Source: Ophelia neglecta (lineage: Eukaryota). Taken from it: a stretch of 64,000 nucleotides of DNA. The notes beneath the pieces are model-generated. The model made no database searches and was not told the DNA's origin. It worked only from the letters and a program-made list of their open reading frames with translations. Position numbers and translations under genes: made by a program. The stretch lies in the NCBI GenBank assembly GCA_965285935.1, contig OZ260664.1, positions 76,322,001-76,386,000 on the forward strand. The letters are read 5' to 3'. Below, piece by piece: positions 10,614-36,100 of this stretch (position 1 is the first letter of the stretch; every line of letters starts with the position of its first letter).

Positions 10614-13600
10614 ATGGAACTGTTCAATGTTCTGTGGGTTTTCGGTATAGTCGCTTCGACAGGTAAGTAAATGTTGATTAACATGCAGTAACACACGTAC
10701 AGCAGGCGATAGTTATAGTCAGCTGGTGTAATGTATACCTTAATTTTATTATATTAGTAAAGATAGTTATAATGATAGTTGTCTCGAACATTCTGAAAAT
10801 TGGTCGAGATGCATGTGTCCGCATGCATAAGACATAAACACGTCTATAGGCCTAGTACCAAATTATGCTCGCTTCAGGTGCCTCCCCCAGGCCCCGTTCA
10901 TGTACTCTTCTAAATCAGTAGTCAGAATATTAATTTCCTTAAAGTTTCCATTTACAATGATTCATTAATTACTTTGTTTTAATAATTACCATCTATAGCC
11001 ATGTGTAATATATTATGTTAAAATGAACGACCTTCAACATATGGAGGGGAATTTTCCTCATATTTAAACAATAATAATGCAATATCAAATATTAAATATA
11101 AAACATTTAATTTGCATTTGAACGCTTTAATAGCAAACTGCTGAAGTCAAGCACGGATTGTGCAGTATGGGATGAGGAATATGGAAAATTGAATTGACGG
11201 AGGAAAACTATAATTGGCAACTGTTAAAATGAAATGGATAACTTTGGTAATAAAGACGTCATATTAAACACGTATCATTGTACCCTAAACCGGACAAATC
11301 AACAGTTCAAAATGAAATTAAAATTAAATATATTAATGGTGATTAACGGTAGGCCTGTACGTATTCCAGATAAAATATTTCAATATCTACATTGGCTCTT
11401 CGAATGAAGAAGCTTTCAATGTCATTTGAAATTACAGTAGAATTCCCTTCCTGTTTTATCATCCAGGCACGAGTAAAGTGTGGCATTTAAAAAAGGCAGC
11501 TATAAACCTGAAACTTTAAAATGTACACGGAATATTAGGCATATATATATTTACGAAAATTTCGACCAATGCACGTCCTCCGCTTGATGAATAGAGCGAG
11601 GTAATTTCCCTAACGAGAGATAACCGATAACTTATTTTACGAGAATAATCAGCCAATTTTTGAAGCTGCCAAGATTTATGTATACCGAATTGTAAAATCA
11701 AGCGGTGACGTTCTATCATATTCTATCTTTATTATCTACTTCGTAACGACACTCCAATGGAGCGCGTTCTGTTGTCATGTGGTCCGACTCCCGGCACTAT
11801 ATAGGCCTAACGAAATTAATGTGTCAAAAGTGCACGCTATTGATGCCGTGATCACATATACGGGTTACAAAAGGTAGGCATATCCTTTCCCACACGCTAT
11901 GAATTTAGCATGCGTTAAGGTTTTTAATTAGTGTATATTTTCCAATTTTGCAGTTACAAATGGCGGACGCGCCTTGGACGAAATTGTCGAACTTGCCTTG
12001 GTCAAAATTTCAAATTATCATACTCGAATATTTTCGGTTTACACACAAGTTTGTTAAAGCTTCATGACGCATGTTTAAATTGCCTGTTTAAAGTCGAGGC
12101 TTTAGAAAGATGGATTATGAAACGTGTTATTACTTTCAAGTGGCCATTGAAAACTACTTTATACTAAGAGCCAAAGCCAATATTGGAATATTTCATCTGG
12201 AGGCGTACCGTCAATCGCCATATAAAAAAGGAATAATATGTTGTATTTTTTCTGGGTTTAAAACTAAATTGAACGTATTTATTCACTCAAGTTATTATAG
12301 TTTTATTTCAAAAAATGGCAATTAATGATTCAACTGTCAATTTAATATACCATATGTTATATTTCATATTATACATTCCATGTTTAATTTCAACAGTTGC
12401 TATTTAAAGCTTTCAAATTTAAATCTAATATTCCATATTTAATATTTCATATTGCATTATTTGTTTAAATATGAGGTAATTTATGATTTCTCGCTGTCAG
12501 TGATCAGTAGTTTGGGAGAAGTGCCCAAGAATACGGCAGCGATCCTGGGCTCTGCGGTACAGTTAAACTGCAGTGGCCCAGCAGTGAAATGGTTTAAGAA
12601 GCGGGACTCCGGGCAGGACTCCCCGTACATCAGCATCTCTGAAAACGGAGTCGTAGCTGCGCAATTTGCATCAGAATTCACCATCGTGTCCACTCATCCC
12701 GACGAGCGACATCTGCTGGTGAGTTCAGCTCAGTTACAACATGATGGAAGTTACAGGTGTGAAATGGGACAAGAAACTGCTGATGCTGAGCTGGTCATAA
12801 TAGGTATTATATTATTTACTAACTGCAAACCCGTGGCAGCAGGAGTTACCTTTTAAACAAATGAATGACCCTCCAACTTCTCTGTCCTCAACTCTTCCAC
12901 TCCTGCCCCCCCCCCTCCTGCCCCACGGGCCCCATTCCTCCCACTCCCCCCTACCGCTCCTGCCCCGCCGGGGTCCTTCCACACTATCCCCCCGGCACCC
13001 TCGATCCCTTCCACTAGTAGCCCCTCCCATCCTGCTCCGACCTATCCCCTCCCCATTGGCCCCCTCTCTTTCACTCCTGCCAACACTGCAGTGCTCTTCA
13101 GCCTTCAGCCTCAGTAGCACAAACTTTAACACGGCACCTGACAATAGGTGCACGATGTATGTAAACCTTCCTTTTGATCTCCATGGCTGGTATTTTCAGA
13201 GAGTGAGATATGTGGTAAGGGCAATTTAACTTAGTCGCTCTACAAATGTGTAGTATTATTTATTTTGATCAATTAATGTGTGAAAGACAAATTCCATGGG
13301 CGAAACCGGTGTCAACACGGGTTATCTTTAAAAGAAATGGATGAAAAATAACAGTGGTTCATTTACCCCCAAGTCCTTTGACTCGCAATTTTCCAAAAGG
13401 ACTCGCAATCTTGCACCGAAGCAATTCAGATGACTCACTCACACGATGGGTTTATAATCACATTGAGGACTCAATCACTGTTCATAAGGACTGAAATTTT
13501 GTATCCCCATCGTGGCCTAACATTCCTACATCCAAATTTCTAAAAGAATTACTGAAATAACCCCCCCCCCCCCGGGCCTCGTAATCCCACTCCTGCATCC

Positions 13601-17060: not shown

Positions 17061-18285
17061 ATGGTTAGTTTTTTTAATGACAATTCCGTCGGATAGCCAT
17101 CTGTGGAACGGATATGTAAAAAATCATTCGTCCTCATTCCTGTGTTGTTTGAACGCTGGTGACAACCCAAGATAACAGTTGGACCGCCAATGAAAAACAC
17201 TGAATGACACACCTTAATATCAAAGCCGTAGCTCATGACCCACATGTCAGCAGTGGAAGCAACACATTTATACTTTTGTGCGTGTAGTCAAGGCGACACG
17301 TTATTACTTATCTTTTTCAGCTGTCAAAAAAAGAAACCTAGGCAAATTTTGTGATTAGTTGTAGTCGTTCTAAATCTGCAATCGGTCTCAGTTCGGTGAT
17401 TTAAGGTTTTGTACAGTACTATTATATATAAATATTTACTGATGTTAAATAACAAAGTTTGAATAAAAGCTGCAAGTCTTTTTTGAATCCGCCACTGATA
17501 ATGTATTATGCACACCAAACCCATATATAATAAAAGCTTCTGCAAGAAAATATAATGGCAATTAAAAAAAAACCATATAGCAGACACTAATATTGCATTT
17601 GGTTACCTTGATTGTCATGCATGAGTTAATGTATTGGTAGTTTTAACTCGCGTTTTACCACTTTCTCTACCGAACAGAAATGATAGGTTTTTTCAGCACA
17701 CACAAAAACAACCTTTGAACATGTTGGAGCTAAACTTTATTTGTCTGAATTCACACTGGTTAAGAGAGCCAATAGATGGAATTTGAACGCGAATGTAGAA
17801 CCAATCTATTGTAGGCAATGGACATTTAAAAGTGGCATGTTTTAGTTTGAATAAAGAAGATAAATACAAGAACAAGTTAAACAAAATTGGCACACGTGTA
17901 AGATTTACCTTACATAATACATATTATTAAGAACTCACTGGAACTAACCAGGTTGCAGCGAGATTGGGACTCCAATAGCATAGCAGTTAGTAATAGCTAT
18001 TGGTAGCAGCGCCCCAATTCATGTAAGCAAATAAATAAGTCTATCAGTTCCTGGTTGGGTATATAGCAACAGGGAAGTCGAGCTAGCTGTTACTTTCAAG
18101 TGCAACACCGCATTTGATATTTTTTCGTTTTCAATGTGGCGAGTGACATTTCAAATAAACAACTTACACATGCTACAGGCTATATGCTTCTTAAACTTTC
18201 GACACAATTGCAAAAAAAACCATGCGGCATTAATGACATTCAGAAGAACTTACGATTTGTTATGAAAAGTCCTAACGTAGTGGTT

Positions 18286-18355
18286 CTTTTGAAGTAAAAT
18301 CAGTCTGCCTTCTGTGCAAGTAAGCACTTTTGAGGACAAACATCATCAGCAAAAG
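18286..18355 (-). promoter_or_regulatory. Type II SECIS element in the selenoprotein 3'UTR
   Basis: Minus strand: cttttg-ctg-ATGAt-gtttgtcctc-AAAA-gtgc-ttactt-gcac-a-gaaggcagac-TGAt-tttactt-caaaag. Helix I is cttttg/caaaag; the core is AUGA.../...UGA (non-Watson-Crick); helix II pairs 9 of 10 positions; unpaired AA; apical mini-stem gtgc/gcac. About 575 nt downstream of the TAG stop. Confidence 0.9.
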
Positions 18356-18769
18356 GCCAGCCACATTTCGTTGGTTGAAAATGCCTAATACCAAACGGTT
18401 CATAATGCACCATAAAATGAAAGTACAAATCTACCCTAAATATTGACAAACATATTACCTTGAATCAATTCTAAAATTATTAGTAAAACAAAGGTCGATA
18501 TGGCTAAGAGTTATATAGCTTAATTTATGTTTTATTTAATGGCAGTGATGAATGTTAATTGATAAGTATCTTAATCAATTTAATTTAAAAATAATAGGAA
18601 AAACAAGACCCAGGAAAATAATTTCATACGTATGTGATTTGACGGGTTACAGAAAAATAATGCAACTAACGGTGCCATATAGATGTGAACAGAATCTCCA
18701 GAAATAATTGACACTCGCGAAAAAGATGGCATATGATTACATATCCTAGAGGCAGTTCATTTGTGCTCA

Positions 18770-18800
18770 ATGTAATCATAAGGAATCCTTATGATTACAT
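18770..18800. repeat. Perfect 15-bp inverted repeat (1-nt spacer) in the selenoprotein 3'UTR
   Basis: atgtaatcataagga-a-tccttatgattacat; a third partial copy (tatgattacat) at 18732-18742. Confidence 0.85.
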
Positions 18801-18929
18801 ACACCACATAATATGACTGACGATAGGATGCGTGGGTGTGAACCAATTATGAATATATACTACCAGTGCTTTTTAACAGTGCCTATCACTGGTGTGTTTA
18901 ATGAAGTTGAATCTTTGCTTTAGATGTAA

Positions 18930-20281
18930 CTATAGGATGAGACACAGCCTCGAGGACTTCTGAGGTTTCATTTTGTCCAGTTCTTCTGATACTAAATTAA
19001 CTAACTGAAATGTGAAGGCATAACAAGAATTATGGAGAGTGTATGCTGATAAAAAGACTCTCAGTTCCGAAACAATGTACGAGCAAACACTAACGTGTTC
19101 CAAAATAAACACATAATCCTCACATTGGTTCAAGCTGAAGAAGCTATATTAAAAAAAAAAGAAACTACCAATACTGGTAGATATCGTTTTTATTCCGGAG
19201 AATTAAAATATCCAGAATTTGAAAACAACACTTTTCCCGTGTGCTCGGAAAGATTGTTTTAAATAAATTAAACATATTACACATTCAAATATCAATCACA
19301 ATGTTTCCGAAAACATCATAGATATAAAGCAAATATTTTTACGATTTTAAATCGGGTTTTGGGTGAAAATAGTGATTCCTGTATTCGTACGAATCATGAC
19401 TCTTTTGGTTTATGGAGAAAGTAGAATATGTATGCATTTACCTTATCTTCGGAAGGAAGTTGGCCAAGAAGGTTGCTTTCGAGTTGTGAATAAACCAAGA
19501 TTCCATTAACAAACACTTCAAACGAATCTACGAAGTAATGTACAAAATTAATGAAACAGATTCTGACTTATAGATTGTTAGCTATATTGAAATAAATGGC
19601 CCAAGGTTTAATCTAGTGATGAGAAACTGAGGTGGTATATAATTAGAAAATCATTGAGTATGCTAAAGAAGGTCAAAGTAAGCAAGCTTTTAAACCATTA
19701 CCTCTTTCTCCATATGAACCACTGATATCACCATTGGGAAAATGCTCCATAGAATATATCTTGAAAGCGGTGAACTTCGTCCCGAATGATGGTCATAGAT
19801 ATCTAAAACCAAAGTTAAGATTATTTGCATCAAGTAGCATTCGGCAAACAAGAAGTGTATTGCTTCGCTGTGTAGATATAGCAGAACCCGACAACCCCAT
19901 TATTTCCCATATTCAATTATCAATATTCGCCTTCTCAACATGTTAAGGATTAGGCCTATATGCGCCATCGGGCGACCATCCAGGGTTTGGTTTGATCACC
20001 TGGGCGTGAACAGTGTAAATATAATAACATCTTTCTATAAGTGGTCTCAAACAGTCACTTTTTGCAATAAAGAAAACGTGCTTCAAATAATATATTTCTA
20101 GTTGGCGACATCTGGATCAAAATCAACATATTCATATAGAACAGTACGGCCTAGTCATAATATTCTTGTTTTCGAACATCAACACTTACCAGTATTCAAC
20201 ATGTATCGTGACTTGGCGGATATCCCTGCTACGAACACCTCGCTGACTATGTATACTATGTATGCTCTCTCCGAGCTCCAT
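18930..20281 (-). CDS. MIEN1: MIEN1/SelW2-like Rdx-family selenoprotein, 117 aa, predicted U-Y-L-U motif and C-terminal CaaX (CLIL)
   Basis: Exons 20281-20190 (MELGESIHSIHSQRGVRSRDIRQVTIHVEY+TG|gtaagt), 19802-19702 (ttttag|A TAT CTA TGA CCA...: U-YL-U-PSFGTKFTAFKIYSMEHFPNGDISGSYGER), 19527-19442 (DSFEVFVNGILVYSQLESNLLGQLPSEDK), 19004-18930 (LVNLVSEELDKMKPQKSSRLCLIL*). Matches the Rdx pattern VEYCxxC...P...G..G.FEI.VNG.LV.S.L....P and the MIEN1-type CaaX end. A SECIS lies downstream. Confidence 0.88.
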
Positions 20282-22375
20282 CTTAAGTATTACCGGTATA
20301 ACTAAGACAGTAAATTCTGATTAAATATAACTAATCGAGCTGTATCCCGGAAATAAACAGGGATGATATTTCGCTACGTTAACACGTTTCAGTTACAATT
20401 ACAATGTGAGTGCTGTAGCTAGATCTCCCAGTTTTCACTCAAAATGGCAAGTGACGAATTTCATAGGCTAGCACGCTTTTCCCTATAATTATTAGTACAT
20501 CAACTGCTCAACGTCAGAAGCTAGACACAATTATTGCTATCTGTGTGTTATCAGATACTCATCAAACAAATACCTGTCGTGATTAGCCCTGAAACAGCAA
20601 TGCAGTTACCCAACAGAGATGATAAGGAGCCTGCTGGACTCTTCAGTATACACGGACAACTCATAAGAATTCCAAGTAATTATGCTCTCCGAGCAGCTCT
20701 AAAAGCTTTTCATATACGAAAGAGCCTAATTGCTGGGGGGCCTGTTATCGTGGGGCACCATTTCCCGTTAATGAATATATGCATTGTTACTCCAGGCTTT
20801 GCTTATTGAACTCATACCTGTGTAGGTAAACAAGATTAGCAAAATATTGGTCTGTAAACATAATAAAACCTTTTAGATGCATTATTACATTTGCTACATC
20901 CCGCACTCACACAATAATGTATTATTTTATTCGTCGATATGATTAATTCGTTTTATCATATAAAGTTGAAGATTACTCGCGACTATCCAGAAAAGGAAAG
21001 ATAAATAGATATGACCACCAATTTGGAGGCTTATTCGGTACTTGCATTTCCTCTAAAATTAATGGCATCTGATCAAAGAGCAAAATTCTGTTGCTCAGAA
21101 CGTATTTTACAATGTTAGTTTGTGTTGGCCAACATGGAGACTTATTAATTTACTGCAACAAATAAGAGTGAGTAATGTCCTCGGTTATAAGAGATGTTCT
21201 AGTGGGTTCCGAGGGTTCAGGTTCTTTCTCGGTGAATAAACCAACACATATCGCTTTTTCCGTTTAGGCGTGTTTGTTATTTACTGATGTTCAGTCTAAC
21301 ATTAGTCTGTAACATGAATGTTTCCACTCCACGCTATGTGAAACACCCTGTCTACACTCTCAAGTTATAATGAGTTGATAAAAACCACTTTCCACATTTT
21401 AGCATTAAACCTTCTAAGGCTACAATTAAAACTACAAGTCAGGTTCAAGCGTTTGCTTATAGGCTTGGATATTTTCCATTTCTTCGACGGCATGTTCTTA
21501 TAATTATGTCTTTGCCCGTCCGTCATGACCAAAGGCCTCCTCTTGATAATAATACACCTAGCTACTGCAAATTATTATTATTGTTAAAGGCGATTTGCAC
21601 AATTAGTCCAGGAACAAAGTTATCTGAAATGCACGTAACTTTTGTATCCAACAATAGCGTCTTTTATTAAATTTCGGTTATTGTTATGCCACTATCAAGG
21701 TTCATTTATTGAAGCAACTCTAATTCATCCTAACAGAAAATACCATTAGTTACTTTATTATTAATCAGTATTGTAAGTAAAAGAAACAAAAAATGTCTTG
21801 ACATGAAATTCCTGGAACAAATTCACGTGTAATCGACGTCCATATCTAATATTTAAAATGTGCAAGTACATCAAGTTAAGGTTGTCCAAATACTGTACCC
21901 TTTTTCCATGCCCTAATTCTCCTTTATTGTTTGGATAAATACTGTTGTTTAGCGATATTCATTAGCAAAAGGCAATATCAGGGTCATATACCTACATTAG
22001 AAGTCTTTTATAATACAAATTGCTAGTCGATGTTTGCTCGAAGGTTACAGCGTACAAATCTCCGCCAATCTGCTGCGGTCGTTCGGAAGTCAGTTGTTAG
22101 AAAAAAACAATTTTTTATAATAATAATTCTCAAAGTTTTTTAGACCGTTTTGTACCCCTGTTATTCTTTTACTTACGATAATAGCATCGTCAGCAAACAC
22201 AAATTGTCGAATTATTATTAAACCGATTGACAGCATAATGCATATAAGGGTTTATATAGTAACTAGGCAACATATATACTTCGACTTTGATAGATTCAAA
22301 TAACAAGAAACCGTTAGAAATTGACAGTGTTCTCTCCATCTCGTACGACTTTAGGACGTTACAAGACACCGTTTA

Positions 22376-33100: not shown

Positions 33101-36100
33101 TATTTTAACGCATTAACAAAGTGGGCCTTCGTTAATGCAATTCGATCATGATTTAAGGTAGGATTTTTTCTTAATTTAATAACAAAACACCGTCAATTGA
33201 GGGTTGTGATGCTATAAGGCTGAGCTCGACTTCAGTAGGACTTCGACGGATTTTTCTAACGGTAACGGCTTATAAAACGTATCTACCGAGGTTAAAAGCT
33301 TGGCAGCAACACTTTTCTGAATCTGGAAGCATGCAGAATTATGGTAAAATGGACTAAAATGGGTCCCTTGCTTTAAACCCGAAAGTCACATCTATGGGAC
33401 TCGTAGACTAAGTATTAAATTCGGTTCATGCTTCCCGACAGTGTTCACTTAACCTGCTTAAATGGGAAGATCTTAATATAGTCTTGGACTGTGCAATTAC
33501 TGCCAATAATCATAGATCTAAAGTGATATAAATGGCACAACATGTGGTATACAGATTACCTGCGTCACTGGGAAAGGTAAAACTGGCTACATAAAAGGTT
33601 AATTCTATATATACATGTATTCTCGCCGGTTGGCAAAGCATATATATATTAGAGTTTTAGAACAGAGATGTGGGGAAGCGGGTAATGTTGTAGGCCTGTG
33701 CCCACTCGCATAAAAGGCCGTCGCATACAATAGCACTCTTGATTCTAGGGTTGAATTTTAAGGCACTGGTATTGAGGTTGCATGCATTTCAATAGGGGGC
33801 TCAATTAACCAGTTGCACTGCACAGTAACTAGAAAAATTTGAGATTCTGATTAATAAGTTTATTGCTAATATAAATATATAAATATATTTATATATATAA
33901 ATATATAAATATTATGCACCTGGTGAATTAAAAATTAAGTCATAAATCAACTTTGAGTAATTTTTAGAAATCTATTACACTAGCTTCCATTAAGAGCCTG
34001 GGCCTCTTGTTATTGCATTCAGAGAGACAGACAGGAGTAATACTAGTGCTTTATGTTTTACAAGGCCACTGCCCAAGGCTAGGTTGTGAACAACAAGTAA
34101 GTTACTCATTTACGGACTACAGACAGGTCATTGCATGTTCATCTAAATTTTCTAGCATAAATAAACAAGAATTATGTGGGATTATGAAAATTTGGCTTAT
34201 TTTCTAATTTATCTAATAAGAATTTTTGCAAAATCATTTCTAACTGCGTGCCTACTTACTTGCATGCATTCAAGATCTTGCATACATTGTACATGTAAGA
34301 TGTTCCATATATGCAAGAAAAATGCACATACACATTATAGCTTGCATTGAGGTTATTTACAAGAAAAATGTTCCCAAATAGATCTAGTGACTCTAAATCC
34401 ATCTTATCTTATTCAAGGCATACATCTACCACACGGTTTCTCTTTCAGAGATATTAGACAAAATATTCATGACCCACTTGCAGAGCGAGAACGTGAAAAT
34501 AAAATACCAAACTTACGGAAATAGATCTATATAAGACCAAGAATATTGGATCATAAGTAATAATAATAGTAGATGGACCATCAGGGTAAATTGTGGCTTA
34601 CTCCTAGCACATATGGGACACCCATTTTCCAAAAGTAAAAACAGAGATTATTTTGGAATTATAAATGAATTTATTTCCTATGTTTACATGTGCAATGCAT
34701 AAAAAGTTTTAACAGGTACATTTCAATGTATATCACTCTAGTGCAAAGCAAAACCTTTCTCTTTTCAATGTTTTCAAACAACCTAGTTGCCCTAAGGTCT
34801 TAAGCTCTGCAAAATAAAAGCTAATATGCTAACACTCTACAAGTCAAATAAATGCATAAACACTTTAGCTATATTTGCAGAAAACTTAAACTTATTAAGC
34901 ATATAAATAGTTTTGTTGCCTGGTTTTGGATGATGAAGCTCTGTACAAGGACCCAGTTTAAAAAAAAAACATACAGAAAAAAATTGAGATGGAAATTGGG
35001 TTTTTAATATTAAAGGTATGAAATGTGCACTTGTAGTTTGTATAATTATAGTTTGGCTGATCATGAACCAAATCTAAAATCAATAGACTTTTGGAGTTTT
35101 TACTACTGATTAACATAATTTTGAACTGTGCTGAGTGAGTATGACAAGCTGGGTCTAACTACTTTAATGGCAGCAATACAGGCCACACACAAATAATCTA
35201 CGTTAAAAAGGAACAAGGCCTACATCTGCTATTCTACTAGAGGAGAGCCTAGTCTATGATAGGCAAACTCAGTTTAGTTTGTAGTTATATGCCATGCCAA
35301 ACAGAGACTTGTTTCAGATACCTACAGACACTTGAGCCTTAATCTGACATTGTAATAACCATACATATGTATGCATAGATCTACATAAAAGACTAAATTT
35401 CATAATAAATCATACATAAATCTGTCAACTCCTCAATTAATCACATTAACATAACATACTCCAATTCAAACATCTCATCATCATCTCAAGAAAATAATTA
35501 TTGCTGTATATGTATTTCTGATAGTAACATAAATATTCATTTACTATATTTAATGCTAGAGAAATGTTAAGATTTGAGCTTCATGGTACTTCCCTGCCTA
35601 TTGTATCCTATAGAAAACCATTTTTGAAATATTCATCATATATAAAAATACCATAGCTAATAGGAGATCTTATAGGAACAAAGTATAGTGGGACACAAAA
35701 CATAAAAGATATACCGGTAACTATTATATTGTGACCAATTTACATAAATGTACTTGTAAATAATGTATGTACATGTTTTAACATACAGTTGCAATAAAAA
35801 CTACTTCTTGGTTTGTATCTATAATACATTGTTATTTTAATGTTTATATCTCTTTATCCCAAACTATGAAAATGATATGTAACACCTCTCTAACTATTCA
35901 AATGCTTTCATGCGCAGTACTTATTTATCTAGGTAAACTTTGTCACCCTTCCCTTTCCAAGATTAAGCATCACTTTCTTATTTTGCTGAGGTACACACAA
36001 TATTTAATACTGTATTATTATGTCATATACATATAGGTGGTTTCAATTTTTACCACAGGCATAAACATCTTACTTTTTTCTTGCATAGAAATATCCTGCT

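What the first reader, a model, noticed from the sequence alone, without database searches (positions are those of the whole stretch)
19702..20281. Rdx-family (MIEN1/SelW-like) selenoprotein with two in-frame UGAs forming a UxxU motif
Seen in sequence: splicing 20190 to 19802 gives GAA TAC TG|A TAT CTA TGA, so both positions of the CxxC/CxxU redox motif are UGA. The rest of the ORF, all splice sites and the SECIS are intact. Established: Rdx proteins (SelW, SelT, SelH, SelV, MIEN1) use CxxU or CxxC. UxxU forming a diselenide is the hallmark of SelL, a different thioredoxin-like family. Inference: this may be a di-Sec Rdx protein able to form a diselenide bond. I do not know of a described Rdx UxxU protein but cannot exclude one. 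Standard gene finders would miss or mis-frame it.
Basis: partly seen in the sequence, partly recalled or inferred. Interest (0 to 1): 0.95.

Follow-up and report, generated by a model that had tools for sequence, protein, structure and literature searches.

The report
SelW/MIEN1-like selenoprotein gene with UxxU
A small four-exon gene for a selenoprotein W/MIEN1-like redox protein really does carry two in-frame UGA codons where its relatives have Cys-x-x-Sec. It probably makes a rare two-selenocysteine (UxxU) active site, but such SelW-family proteins have been predicted before, and expression and conservation could not be tested here.

Summary
On the minus strand a GT-AG gene (exons 20281-20190, 19802-19702, 19527-19442, 19004-18930) splices to ...VEY-TG|A-TAT-CTA-TGA-CCA.... 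Contigs from three DNA runs of one sample show no base difference in any exon.

- **Homology of the first UGA.** Ten SelW-family paralogues on another chromosome share all three intron positions and phases. All ten start exon 2 with T or C (Cys); only this gene has A.
- **Sec decoding signals.** A textbook type II SECIS lies 575-645 nt after the stop. The genome has tRNA-Sec and SepSecS.
- **Subtype.** The protein ends in CLIL, a CaaX box as in MIEN1.

So this is an Rdx selenoprotein gene whose CxxU Cys codon has become UGA. With a SECIS present it is most likely read as Sec, giving UxxU.

A two-Sec SelW-like protein was predicted in Ostreococcus lucimarinus in 2007. A UxxU SelW was reported in amphioxus in 2012 and 2020.

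No RNA run exists for this DNA, and no orthologue could be retrieved. A private or recent nonsense allele therefore cannot be excluded.

Earlier notes of this scan cover this window's SECIS and CaaX box, and a SelL UxxU gene elsewhere in the genome. Verdict: a real feature, a new member of a known rare kind, of moderate interest.

The parts
20190..20281 (-). Coding exon 1: ATG, a 23-residue N-terminal extension, then the beta-1 strand QVTIHVEY plus TG, the first two bases of the split first UGA. Donor is ctg|gtaagt at 20189.
   Evidence: Paralogue exon 1 ends the same way...VQVSVEY+TG|gt.
19803..20189 (-). Intron 1 (387 nt, GT..AG, phase 2), splitting the first redox codon.
   Evidence: The same intron position occurs in 10 of 10 paralogues.
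19802..19802 (-). First base of exon 2: A, which completes TG|A (UGA1). All ten paralogues have T or C here, giving Cys.
   Evidence: No variant appears in the contigs of 3 DNA runs.
19793..19795 (-). UGA2, the canonical Sec codon of the CxxU motif.
   Evidence: It aligns with the TGA of the paralogues (CAG-U-GY or CGK-U-GY).
19702..19802 (-). Coding exon 2: A-YL-UGA-PSFGTKFTAFKIYSMEHFPNGDISGSYGER-G. It ends in phase 1 with donor gag|gtaatg.
   Evidence: The paralogues' exon 2 ends in the same phase and is one codon shorter.
19442..19527 (-). Coding exon 3: (D)SFEVFVNGILVYSQLESNLLGQLPSEDK, the most conserved Rdx segment.
   Evidence: PF10262, 14 bits, E 0.061; 40-48% identity to paralogues; exon-3 profile hits MIEN1 2LJK at E 3.3e-10.
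18930..19004 (-). Coding exon 4: LVNLVSEELDKMKPQKSSRLCLIL plus TAG. CLIL (18933-18944) is a CaaX box with X = Leu.
18286..18355 (-). Type II SECIS. AUGA is at 18346-18343, followed by 11 nt, an unpaired AAAA, the mini-stem GUGC/GCAC, and UGAU with GA at 18301-18300. Helix I pairs CCUUUUG with CAAAAG. It lies 575-645 nt downstream of the stop.
   Evidence: Rfam does not report it, but it also misses the paralogues' SECIS.

Best explanation
This is a single-copy, four-exon gene for a divergent SelW2/MIEN1-like member of the Rdx family of thioredoxin-fold oxidoreductases. In its relatives the active site after strand beta-1 reads VEY-Cys-x-x-Sec. Here the Cys codon, which is split by a conserved phase-2 intron, has become TG|A, so the mature mRNA reads UGA-UAU-CUA-UGA. 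One type II SECIS in the 3'UTR can recode any in-frame UGA upstream of it. Both codons are therefore most likely read as selenocysteine, giving a U-Y-L-U site that would cycle between two selenols and an intramolecular diselenide. That is the chemistry shown for SelL, in a different fold. The C-terminal CLIL would be geranylgeranylated, tethering the protein to membranes as the CVIL box does for human MIEN1. What is shown: the gene structure, both UGAs, their homology to CxxU, the SECIS, and the Sec machinery in the genome. What is inferred: that UGA1 is decoded, that a diselenide forms, that the protein is prenylated, and that the allele is fixed.
For: The splice model and both UGAs were read directly. 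There is no base difference in the exons in contigs of three DNA runs. Ten paralogues on contig C5 share the exon-1 end VEY+TG|gt, the exon-2 start [T/C]-xx-xx-TGA, intron 2 in phase 1 and intron 3 in phase 0; only this gene has A. Exon 3 is 40-48% identical to the paralogues, which pass the PF10262 cut-off. The exon-3 profile hits MIEN1 2LJK at E 3.3e-10. The SECIS fold is canonical. A simple SECIS scan gives 2 hits in 128 kb of window sequence, about 1 is expected by chance, and one of them lies on the right strand 0.6 kb after the stop. tRNA-Sec with anticodon tca and a SepSecS gene are present. The paralogues have their own conserved SECIS, so the organism uses Sec widely. There is literature precedent for two-Sec SelW-family proteins. 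The start context a-g-a-ATG-G is good, and the ORF has no other defect.
Against: No RNA run holds this DNA, so the splice junction, the 3'UTR extent and expression are unverified. No orthologue was retrievable, so conservation of TG|A is unknown. The DNA runs are one sample, and contigs drop minor alleles, so heterozygosity is not excluded. ATTAAA/AATAAA hexamers lie between the stop and the SECIS at 18902, 18584 and 18540-18531 (and read directly); a transcript ending there would lack the SECIS. The active-site loop is divergent (U-P-S-F instead of U-G-Y/F, with one extra codon), and exon 2 is only 14-18% identical to the paralogues, which could also reflect relaxed constraint. Rfam reports no SECIS.
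Confidence: 0.55

Rival explanations
1. The A at 19802 is a nonsense change, private, polymorphic or recently fixed, in what is otherwise a CxxU SelW2/MIEN1-like gene. UGA1 mostly terminates translation after 30 residues or triggers NMD. The locus is then a null or hypomorphic allele, or a young pseudogene, rather than a functional UxxU protein.
For: A single transversion from TGT or TGC suffices. Only one individual was sequenced. No orthologue or transcript supports conservation. Exon 2 and the active-site loop are unusually divergent. Mariotti et al. 2012 found no Cys-to-Sec conversion in the vertebrates they surveyed, so such events are rare.
Against: Everything else is intact: the start codon, three introns with canonical sites, the frame, the CaaX box and the SECIS. 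A UGA three codons before a decoded Sec UGA and served by the same SECIS is expected to be recoded at least partly, as in SelL. No alternative allele appears in contigs of three runs. UxxU SelW-family genes have been predicted in two other lineages.
Confidence: 0.3
2. The mature mRNA does not contain UGA1. Another first exon, a micro-exon, a shifted splice site or A-to-I editing (UGA to UGG) replaces it.
For: No transcript data exist to exclude it.
Against: Exon 2 begins with A at the only usable acceptor, so no upstream exon can make Cys there. No second exon-2-like copy and no in-phase alternative donor exists in 17-24 kb. The exon-1 end VEY+TG|gtaagt and the intron position match the paralogues exactly. 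Editing would give Trp, which is useless in a redox motif.
Confidence: 0.08
3. The A is a sequencing or assembly error, and the true base is T or C.
For: All the data derive from one sample.
Against: Three separate runs each give one contig across the gene, at depth 27, 24 and 11, with zero mismatches in the exons.
Confidence: 0.03

Closest known systems
UxxU-type selenoprotein W of amphioxus (Jiang et al. 2012, PMC3473315; Jiang et al. 2020, PMC7539508) and the two-Sec SelW-like protein of Ostreococcus lucimarinus (Lobanov et al. 2007, PMC2375036)
   Same: An Rdx/SelW-family protein in which the Cys of CxxU is also encoded by UGA. All are predicted from genome sequence plus a SECIS.
   Different: The organism differs: chromosomes here exceed 100 Mb in a 762 Mb genome. 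This gene is a divergent paralogue with an N-terminal extension and a CaaX box. I could not see those sequences (the figures are images), so I cannot say whether they are the same subtype. None of the three, as far as the papers read here show, has been confirmed at the protein level.
MIEN1 (C17orf37, Rdx12) and SELENOW2
   Same: They share the VEY-C/U-x-x-C/U motif after beta-1, the FE-x-x-x-NG-x-LV-x-S-x-LE segment (the exon-3 profile hits 2LJK at E 3.3e-10), an N-terminal extension before beta-1, and a C-terminal CaaX with Leu at X (CLIL here, CVIL in human MIEN1 from my own knowledge). Sec forms exist in fishes, and invertebrate genes fall in the SELENOW2 branch (PMC13134290).
   Different: The known forms are CxxC or CxxU. 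Here both positions are UGA. The residue after the second position is Pro-Ser-Phe rather than Gly-Phe/Tyr. No phylogenetic placement was done, because that needs the joined sequence.
Selenoprotein L (Shchedrina et al. 2007, PNAS 104:13919, cited)
   Same: Two Sec separated by two residues (UxxU), decoded by one SECIS. A diselenide has been demonstrated experimentally for SelL.
   Different: SelL has a peroxiredoxin-like fold, not an Rdx fold. There is no sequence relationship and no CaaX box. The resemblance is in mechanism only.
The genome's own SelW-family array on contig C5 (16.6-19.0 Mb)
   Same: Identical intron positions and phases, the same VEY+TG| exon-1 end, the Sec UGA at the same codon, and a SECIS downstream.
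   Different: All have Cys (TG|T or TG|C) at the first position, a short N-terminus (MANMVQVSVEY...), a different SECIS (without the AAAA-bulge and mini-stem arrangement), and many copies. The target is single copy.

Membership tests
Rdx family (PF10262: SelW, SelV, SelT, SelH, MIEN1) | Sequence match to the Rdx domain model | tested here: inconclusive
   Only single exons could be scored. Exon 3 gives 14 bits, E 0.061, against a cut-off of 22.6; the other exons give nothing. Indirectly, exon 3 is 40-48% identical to paralogues that pass the cut-off, and the joint profile hits MIEN1 2LJK at E 3.3e-10.
Rdx family (PF10262: SelW, SelV, SelT, SelH, MIEN1) | CxxC/CxxU-type redox motif directly after the first beta strand (h-x-h-x-Y-C-x-x-U) | tested here: met
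   QVTIHVEY-UGA-Y-L-UGA. Position and spacing are identical to VQVSVEY-C-A-G-U in the paralogues. The first position is UGA instead of Cys.
Rdx family (PF10262: SelW, SelV, SelT, SelH, MIEN1) | Shared gene structure with bona fide family members | tested here: met
   All three introns are at the same positions and phases as in 10 paralogues.
Rdx family (PF10262: SelW, SelV, SelT, SelH, MIEN1) | Thioredoxin-like beta-alpha-beta-beta-beta-alpha fold | not tested
Eukaryotic selenoprotein gene | In-frame UGA aligned with Sec or Cys of homologues | tested here: met
   UGA2 aligns with the paralogues' TGA, and UGA1 with their split Cys codon.
Eukaryotic selenoprotein gene | SECIS element in the 3'UTR | tested here: met
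   The AUGA / AAAA / mini-stem / UGAU structure appears in the minimum-free-energy fold, and a pattern scan finds it. Rfam is negative, but it is also negative on the paralogues' conserved SECIS. That the SECIS lies inside the transcript is unverified.
Eukaryotic selenoprotein gene | Sec machinery in the genome | tested here: met
   tRNA-Sec scores 77.9 bits with anticodon tca, and there is a multi-exon SepSecS gene.
Eukaryotic selenoprotein gene | Selenium actually incorporated at the UGA(s) | not testable with these tools
   It needs 75Se labelling, mass spectrometry or ribosome profiling.
MIEN1 / SELENOW2 subgroup | C-terminal CaaX prenylation box | tested here: met
   ...SRLCLIL followed by TAG. 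Prenylation itself was not tested.
MIEN1 / SELENOW2 subgroup | Phylogenetic placement with SELENOW2/MIEN1 rather than SELENOW1 | not tested
   It requires the joined protein and orthologues, and none were retrievable.
Selenoprotein L | UxxU motif | tested here: met
   UGA-UAU-CUA-UGA after splicing.
Selenoprotein L | Peroxiredoxin-like domain | tested here: not met
   The exons match Rdx/SelW/MIEN1, not Prx. This is not a SelL member; it may only work like one.

The most novel reading that the evidence does not exclude
The TG|A is fixed in this lineage and both UGAs are decoded. That would give a geranylgeranylated, membrane-anchored MIEN1/SELENOW2-like oxidoreductase with a diselenide (U-Y-L-U) active site. 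It would be a natural Cys-to-Sec conversion in a metazoan Rdx protein, and a second fold besides SelL that uses a diselenide redox couple.
Probability: 0.5. Interest if true: 0.6.

Novelty: new member of a known kind. Interest (0 to 1): 0.42.

Why it matters
Cys-to-Sec conversions are rare; Mariotti et al. 2012 found none in the vertebrates they surveyed. Natural diselenide active sites have been shown experimentally only for SelL. A UxxU Rdx protein with a prenylation box would offer a natural test of what a second Sec adds to a CxxU oxidoreductase: redox potential, resistance to over-oxidation, and the cost of decoding two UGAs 9 nt apart. The locus also shows a Sec codon that exists only after splicing (TG|A). 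Neither ORF-based nor exon-based gene finders can see such a codon, and the locus could serve as a test case for selenoprotein annotation pipelines. The value is limited because the idea is already in the literature for SelW, and nothing here shows expression.

Tried and rejected
- **Rfam** on 16.0-21.5 kb and on the 3'UTR found no SECIS. This is uninformative, because Rfam also missed the conserved SECIS of the paralogues.
- **Sequencing runs**: only three DNA runs of one sample, kept as contigs, and no RNA. Reads were laid once.
- **The search for homologous proteins** with the natural open frames around exon 3 (57 aa) and exon 4 (72 aa) found no relatives.
- **The search of protein representatives** with the 30-aa exon-3 piece gave one hit, P0001, an 837-aa repeat protein matched through a reiterated 17-residue stretch. 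It is spurious.
The 57-aa open frame gave 517 pattern matches, none confirmed.
- **PDB phmmer** with exon 3 alone found nothing.
- **ESM Atlas** with exon 3 gave only a weak lead: a SelW-like cluster at rank 4, score 0.85.
- **Pfam** on exons 1, 2 and 4 found nothing.
- **Long ORFs** in the window were tried as a way to identify the organism or use synteny; only an Ig-like exon turned up.
- **Earlier scan notes** searched by taxon words gave nothing.
- **A second SECIS-like hit** at 34402-34470 (-) has no coding-looking sequence upstream, and about one hit per window is expected by chance. I treat it as chance.
- **A first attempt to find the paralogues' exon 1** within 1.5-kb flanks failed. 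It was solved by fetching more sequence.
- **Left out by rule**: joining the exons into one protein for Pfam, homology search, phylogeny or structure prediction, and any read-through of the two UGAs.

Full report
**What is in the sequence.**
The minus strand of 18.2-20.3 kb holds a compact four-exon gene.
- Exon 1 (20281-20190) starts with ATG in a good context (a at -3, G at +4). It encodes 30 residues ending QVTIHVEY, then the two bases TG, followed by the donor gtaagt.
- Exon 2 (19802-19702) follows the acceptor ttggttttag. It reads A TAT CTA TGA CCA... and ends in phase 1 at gag|gtaatg.
- Exon 3 (19527-19442) encodes (D)SFEVFVNGILVYSQLESNLLGQLPSEDK and ends in phase 0 at aag|gtaaat.
- Exon 4 (19004-18930) encodes LVNLVSEELDKMKPQKSSRLCLIL and then TAG.

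The CDS is 354 nt. A scan of 17-24 kb found no second exon-2-like acceptor and no in-phase alternative donor. Because exon 2 begins with A, no upstream exon could make a Cys codon at this acceptor.

**Is the A real?**
Only three public runs hold this DNA. All come from one sample and study, are kept as contigs, and none is RNA. Laid on 18200-20400, each run gives one contig across the whole gene, at depth 27.5, 24.3 and 11.1, with no base difference in any exon. The only differences are a G>T at 18822 inside a repeated palindrome and small intronic indels. An assembly error is therefore unlikely. The runs are probably the assembly's own source, and contigs drop minor alleles, so heterozygosity is not excluded.

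**Homology of the first UGA.**
A whole-genome scan with PF10262 (Rdx) found eleven exon hits clustered on contig C5 at 16.6-19.0 Mb, plus a SelT-like exon on C2. These C5 genes serve as an internal control.
- Their exon 1 ends ...MANMVQVSVEY+TG|gtgagt or ...MASKVQVSVEY+TG|gtaagt.
- Their exon 2 starts, after a pyrimidine-rich acceptor, with T or C and then GCC GGA TGA GGn TAT or GGn AAA TGA GGn TAT. That gives C-A-G-U-G-Y or C-G-K-U-G-Y.
- Their intron 2 is in phase 1 after ...GR. Their intron 3 is in phase 0 after ...DTDE...VEE or ...ITDE.

The target has the same three intron positions and phases. The split codon TG|N is therefore positionally homologous to the Cys of CxxU. Ten of ten paralogues have T or C there; the target alone has A.

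Other comparisons with the paralogues:
- Exon 3 is 40-48% identical to them.
- Exon 2 is only 14-18% identical, with the Pro and Gly landmarks conserved and one extra codon.
- A profile of the exon-3 alignment hits human MIEN1 (2LJK) at E 3.3e-10 and mouse SelW (2NPB) weakly.
- On its own, the target's exon 3 scores 14 bits against PF10262, below the cut-off. This is expected for a 28-residue piece.

The target is single copy.

**SECIS and Sec machinery.**
The minimum-free-energy fold of that stretch shows:
- helix I;
- an internal loop with AUGA opposite UGAU;
- a helix II of about 10 bp;
- an unpaired AAAA 11 nt after AUGA;
- a GUGC/GCAC mini-stem.

This is a form 2 SECIS. A simple motif-plus-pairing scan finds two hits on both strands of the 64-kb window, against about one in shuffles. 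One of the two lies on the correct strand 0.6 kb after the stop.

Rfam reports no SECIS. It also reports none for the paralogues, although four of six of them carry a conserved SECIS-like element...CCAATGACTGAGCGGCCTGCAAATTTCAAATGGACTGCCTATGATGAAACC..., downstream. The Rfam negative therefore carries no weight. The genome has a tRNA-Sec with anticodon tca and a multi-exon SepSecS gene.

One caveat remains. ATTAAA/AATAAA hexamers occur between the stop and the SECIS at 18902, 18584 and 18540-18531. The next AATAAA after the SECIS is at 17741 (and read directly). Without RNA data I cannot show that the SECIS lies inside the transcript.

**Mechanism proposed.**
In eukaryotes a 3'UTR SECIS recodes in-frame UGAs upstream of it. 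This is established knowledge; SelL and SelP decode several UGAs. A UGA three codons before the canonical Sec codon should therefore be read as Sec at least partly, giving VEY-U-Y-L-U-PSF.
- By analogy with CxxU Rdx proteins and with SelL, the two selenols would form an intramolecular diselenide during turnover.
- CLIL, a CaaX box with Leu at X, predicts geranylgeranylation and membrane anchoring, as for the CVIL box of human MIEN1 (my own knowledge).
- The N-terminal extension of 23 residues before beta-1 also resembles MIEN1 rather than the short SelW N-terminus seen in the paralogues.
- Decoding, the diselenide and prenylation are all inferences.

**What is known.**
The literature has two.
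- Lobanov et al. 2007 (PMC2375036) predicted a SelW-like protein with two Sec in Ostreococcus lucimarinus.
- Jiang et al. 2012 (PMC3473315) found a SelW with two Sec in amphioxus.
- Jiang et al. 2020 (PMC7539508) state that the amphioxus protein carries UxxU and call the O. lucimarinus protein another UxxU-type SELENOW.

Ticó et al. 2026 (PMC13134290) place invertebrate genes of the SELENOW2/MIEN1 group in the SELENOW2 branch and describe Sec-containing MIEN1 in fishes. Mariotti et al. 2012 (PMC3316567) found CxxU in all vertebrate SelW, SelW2 and SelV proteins and no Cys-to-Sec conversions. Prokaryotic SelW-like proteins are listed as CxxU. The present gene is therefore a further instance of a rare, already predicted variant. 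The combination with a CaaX box may be new. I could not see the published sequences, because the figures are held as images.

**What could not be done.**
- No RNA run was available.
- No orthologue was found by any route.
- The organism is not identified. The genome is 762 Mb with contigs above 100 Mb, and it has a rich selenoprotein complement.
Whole-protein Pfam scoring, phylogenetic placement and structure prediction were therefore left out.

**Verdict.**
The identification as an Rdx selenoprotein gene with two in-frame UGAs at the CxxU positions is well supported.

| Reading | Probability |
|---|---|
| Both UGAs are Sec in a functional, fixed UxxU protein (the best explanation) | about 0.55 |
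| Private or recent nonsense allele | about 0.3 |
| Alternative processing of the mRNA | about 0.08 |
| Sequencing or assembly error | about 0.03 |

Novelty: a new member of a known, rare and so far only predicted kind. Interest: moderate.

Noticed in passing
G000 contig C5, 16.6-19.0 Mb (loci L001-L010, L012, L015-L024): There is a large array of at least ten SelW-family selenoprotein gene copies (MANMVQVSVEY-C-A-G-U-GY... and MASKVQVSVEY-C-G-K-U-GY...). Each has an in-frame TGA, and most have a conserved SECIS 1.2-2.4 kb after exon 3. Several copies sit in near-identical repeat units. This is an unusual expansion of one selenoprotein family.
   Followed up: partly
window 34402-34470 (-): A second SECIS-like motif turned up: ATGA, AA at +11, GA, with 8 of 9 helix II pairs. 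No coding-looking sequence lies upstream, and about one such hit per window is expected by chance.
   Followed up: partly
window 18770-18800: A perfect 15-bp inverted repeat with a 1-nt loop (ATGTAATCATAAGGA T TCCTTATGATTACAT) sits in the 3'UTR. Extra short contigs with unrelated flanks map to 18789-18827 in two runs, so it belongs to a repeat found elsewhere in the genome. Rfam gives only sub-threshold miRNA and snoRNA look-alikes.
   Followed up: no
window 19232 and 20072: Contigs of all three runs lack 3 bases at 19232 (intron 3) relative to the assembly, and one run lacks 1 base at 20072 (intron 1). These are small assembly or allelic indels outside the coding sequence.
   Followed up: no
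G000 contig C2, 9.28-9.60 Mb: More than 40 tandem tRNA-like genes score just under the tRNA-Sec gathering threshold (about 43.6 bits). They are a large tRNA gene array of some other isotype. The true tRNA-Sec is on C9 at 47,360,617-47,360,702.
   Followed up: no
G000 contig C2, 82,595,501-82,595,575 (L011): This exon encodes ...VPVWSKLESGRIPSPQEMFQIIDNHM. It looks like selenoprotein T, another Rdx member.
   Followed up: no
window 12452-12856 (+): This open frame has an immunoglobulin-like domain (Ig_3, V-set and I-set at E 1e-5 to 1e-3). It is probably an exon of a neighbouring gene.
   Followed up: no
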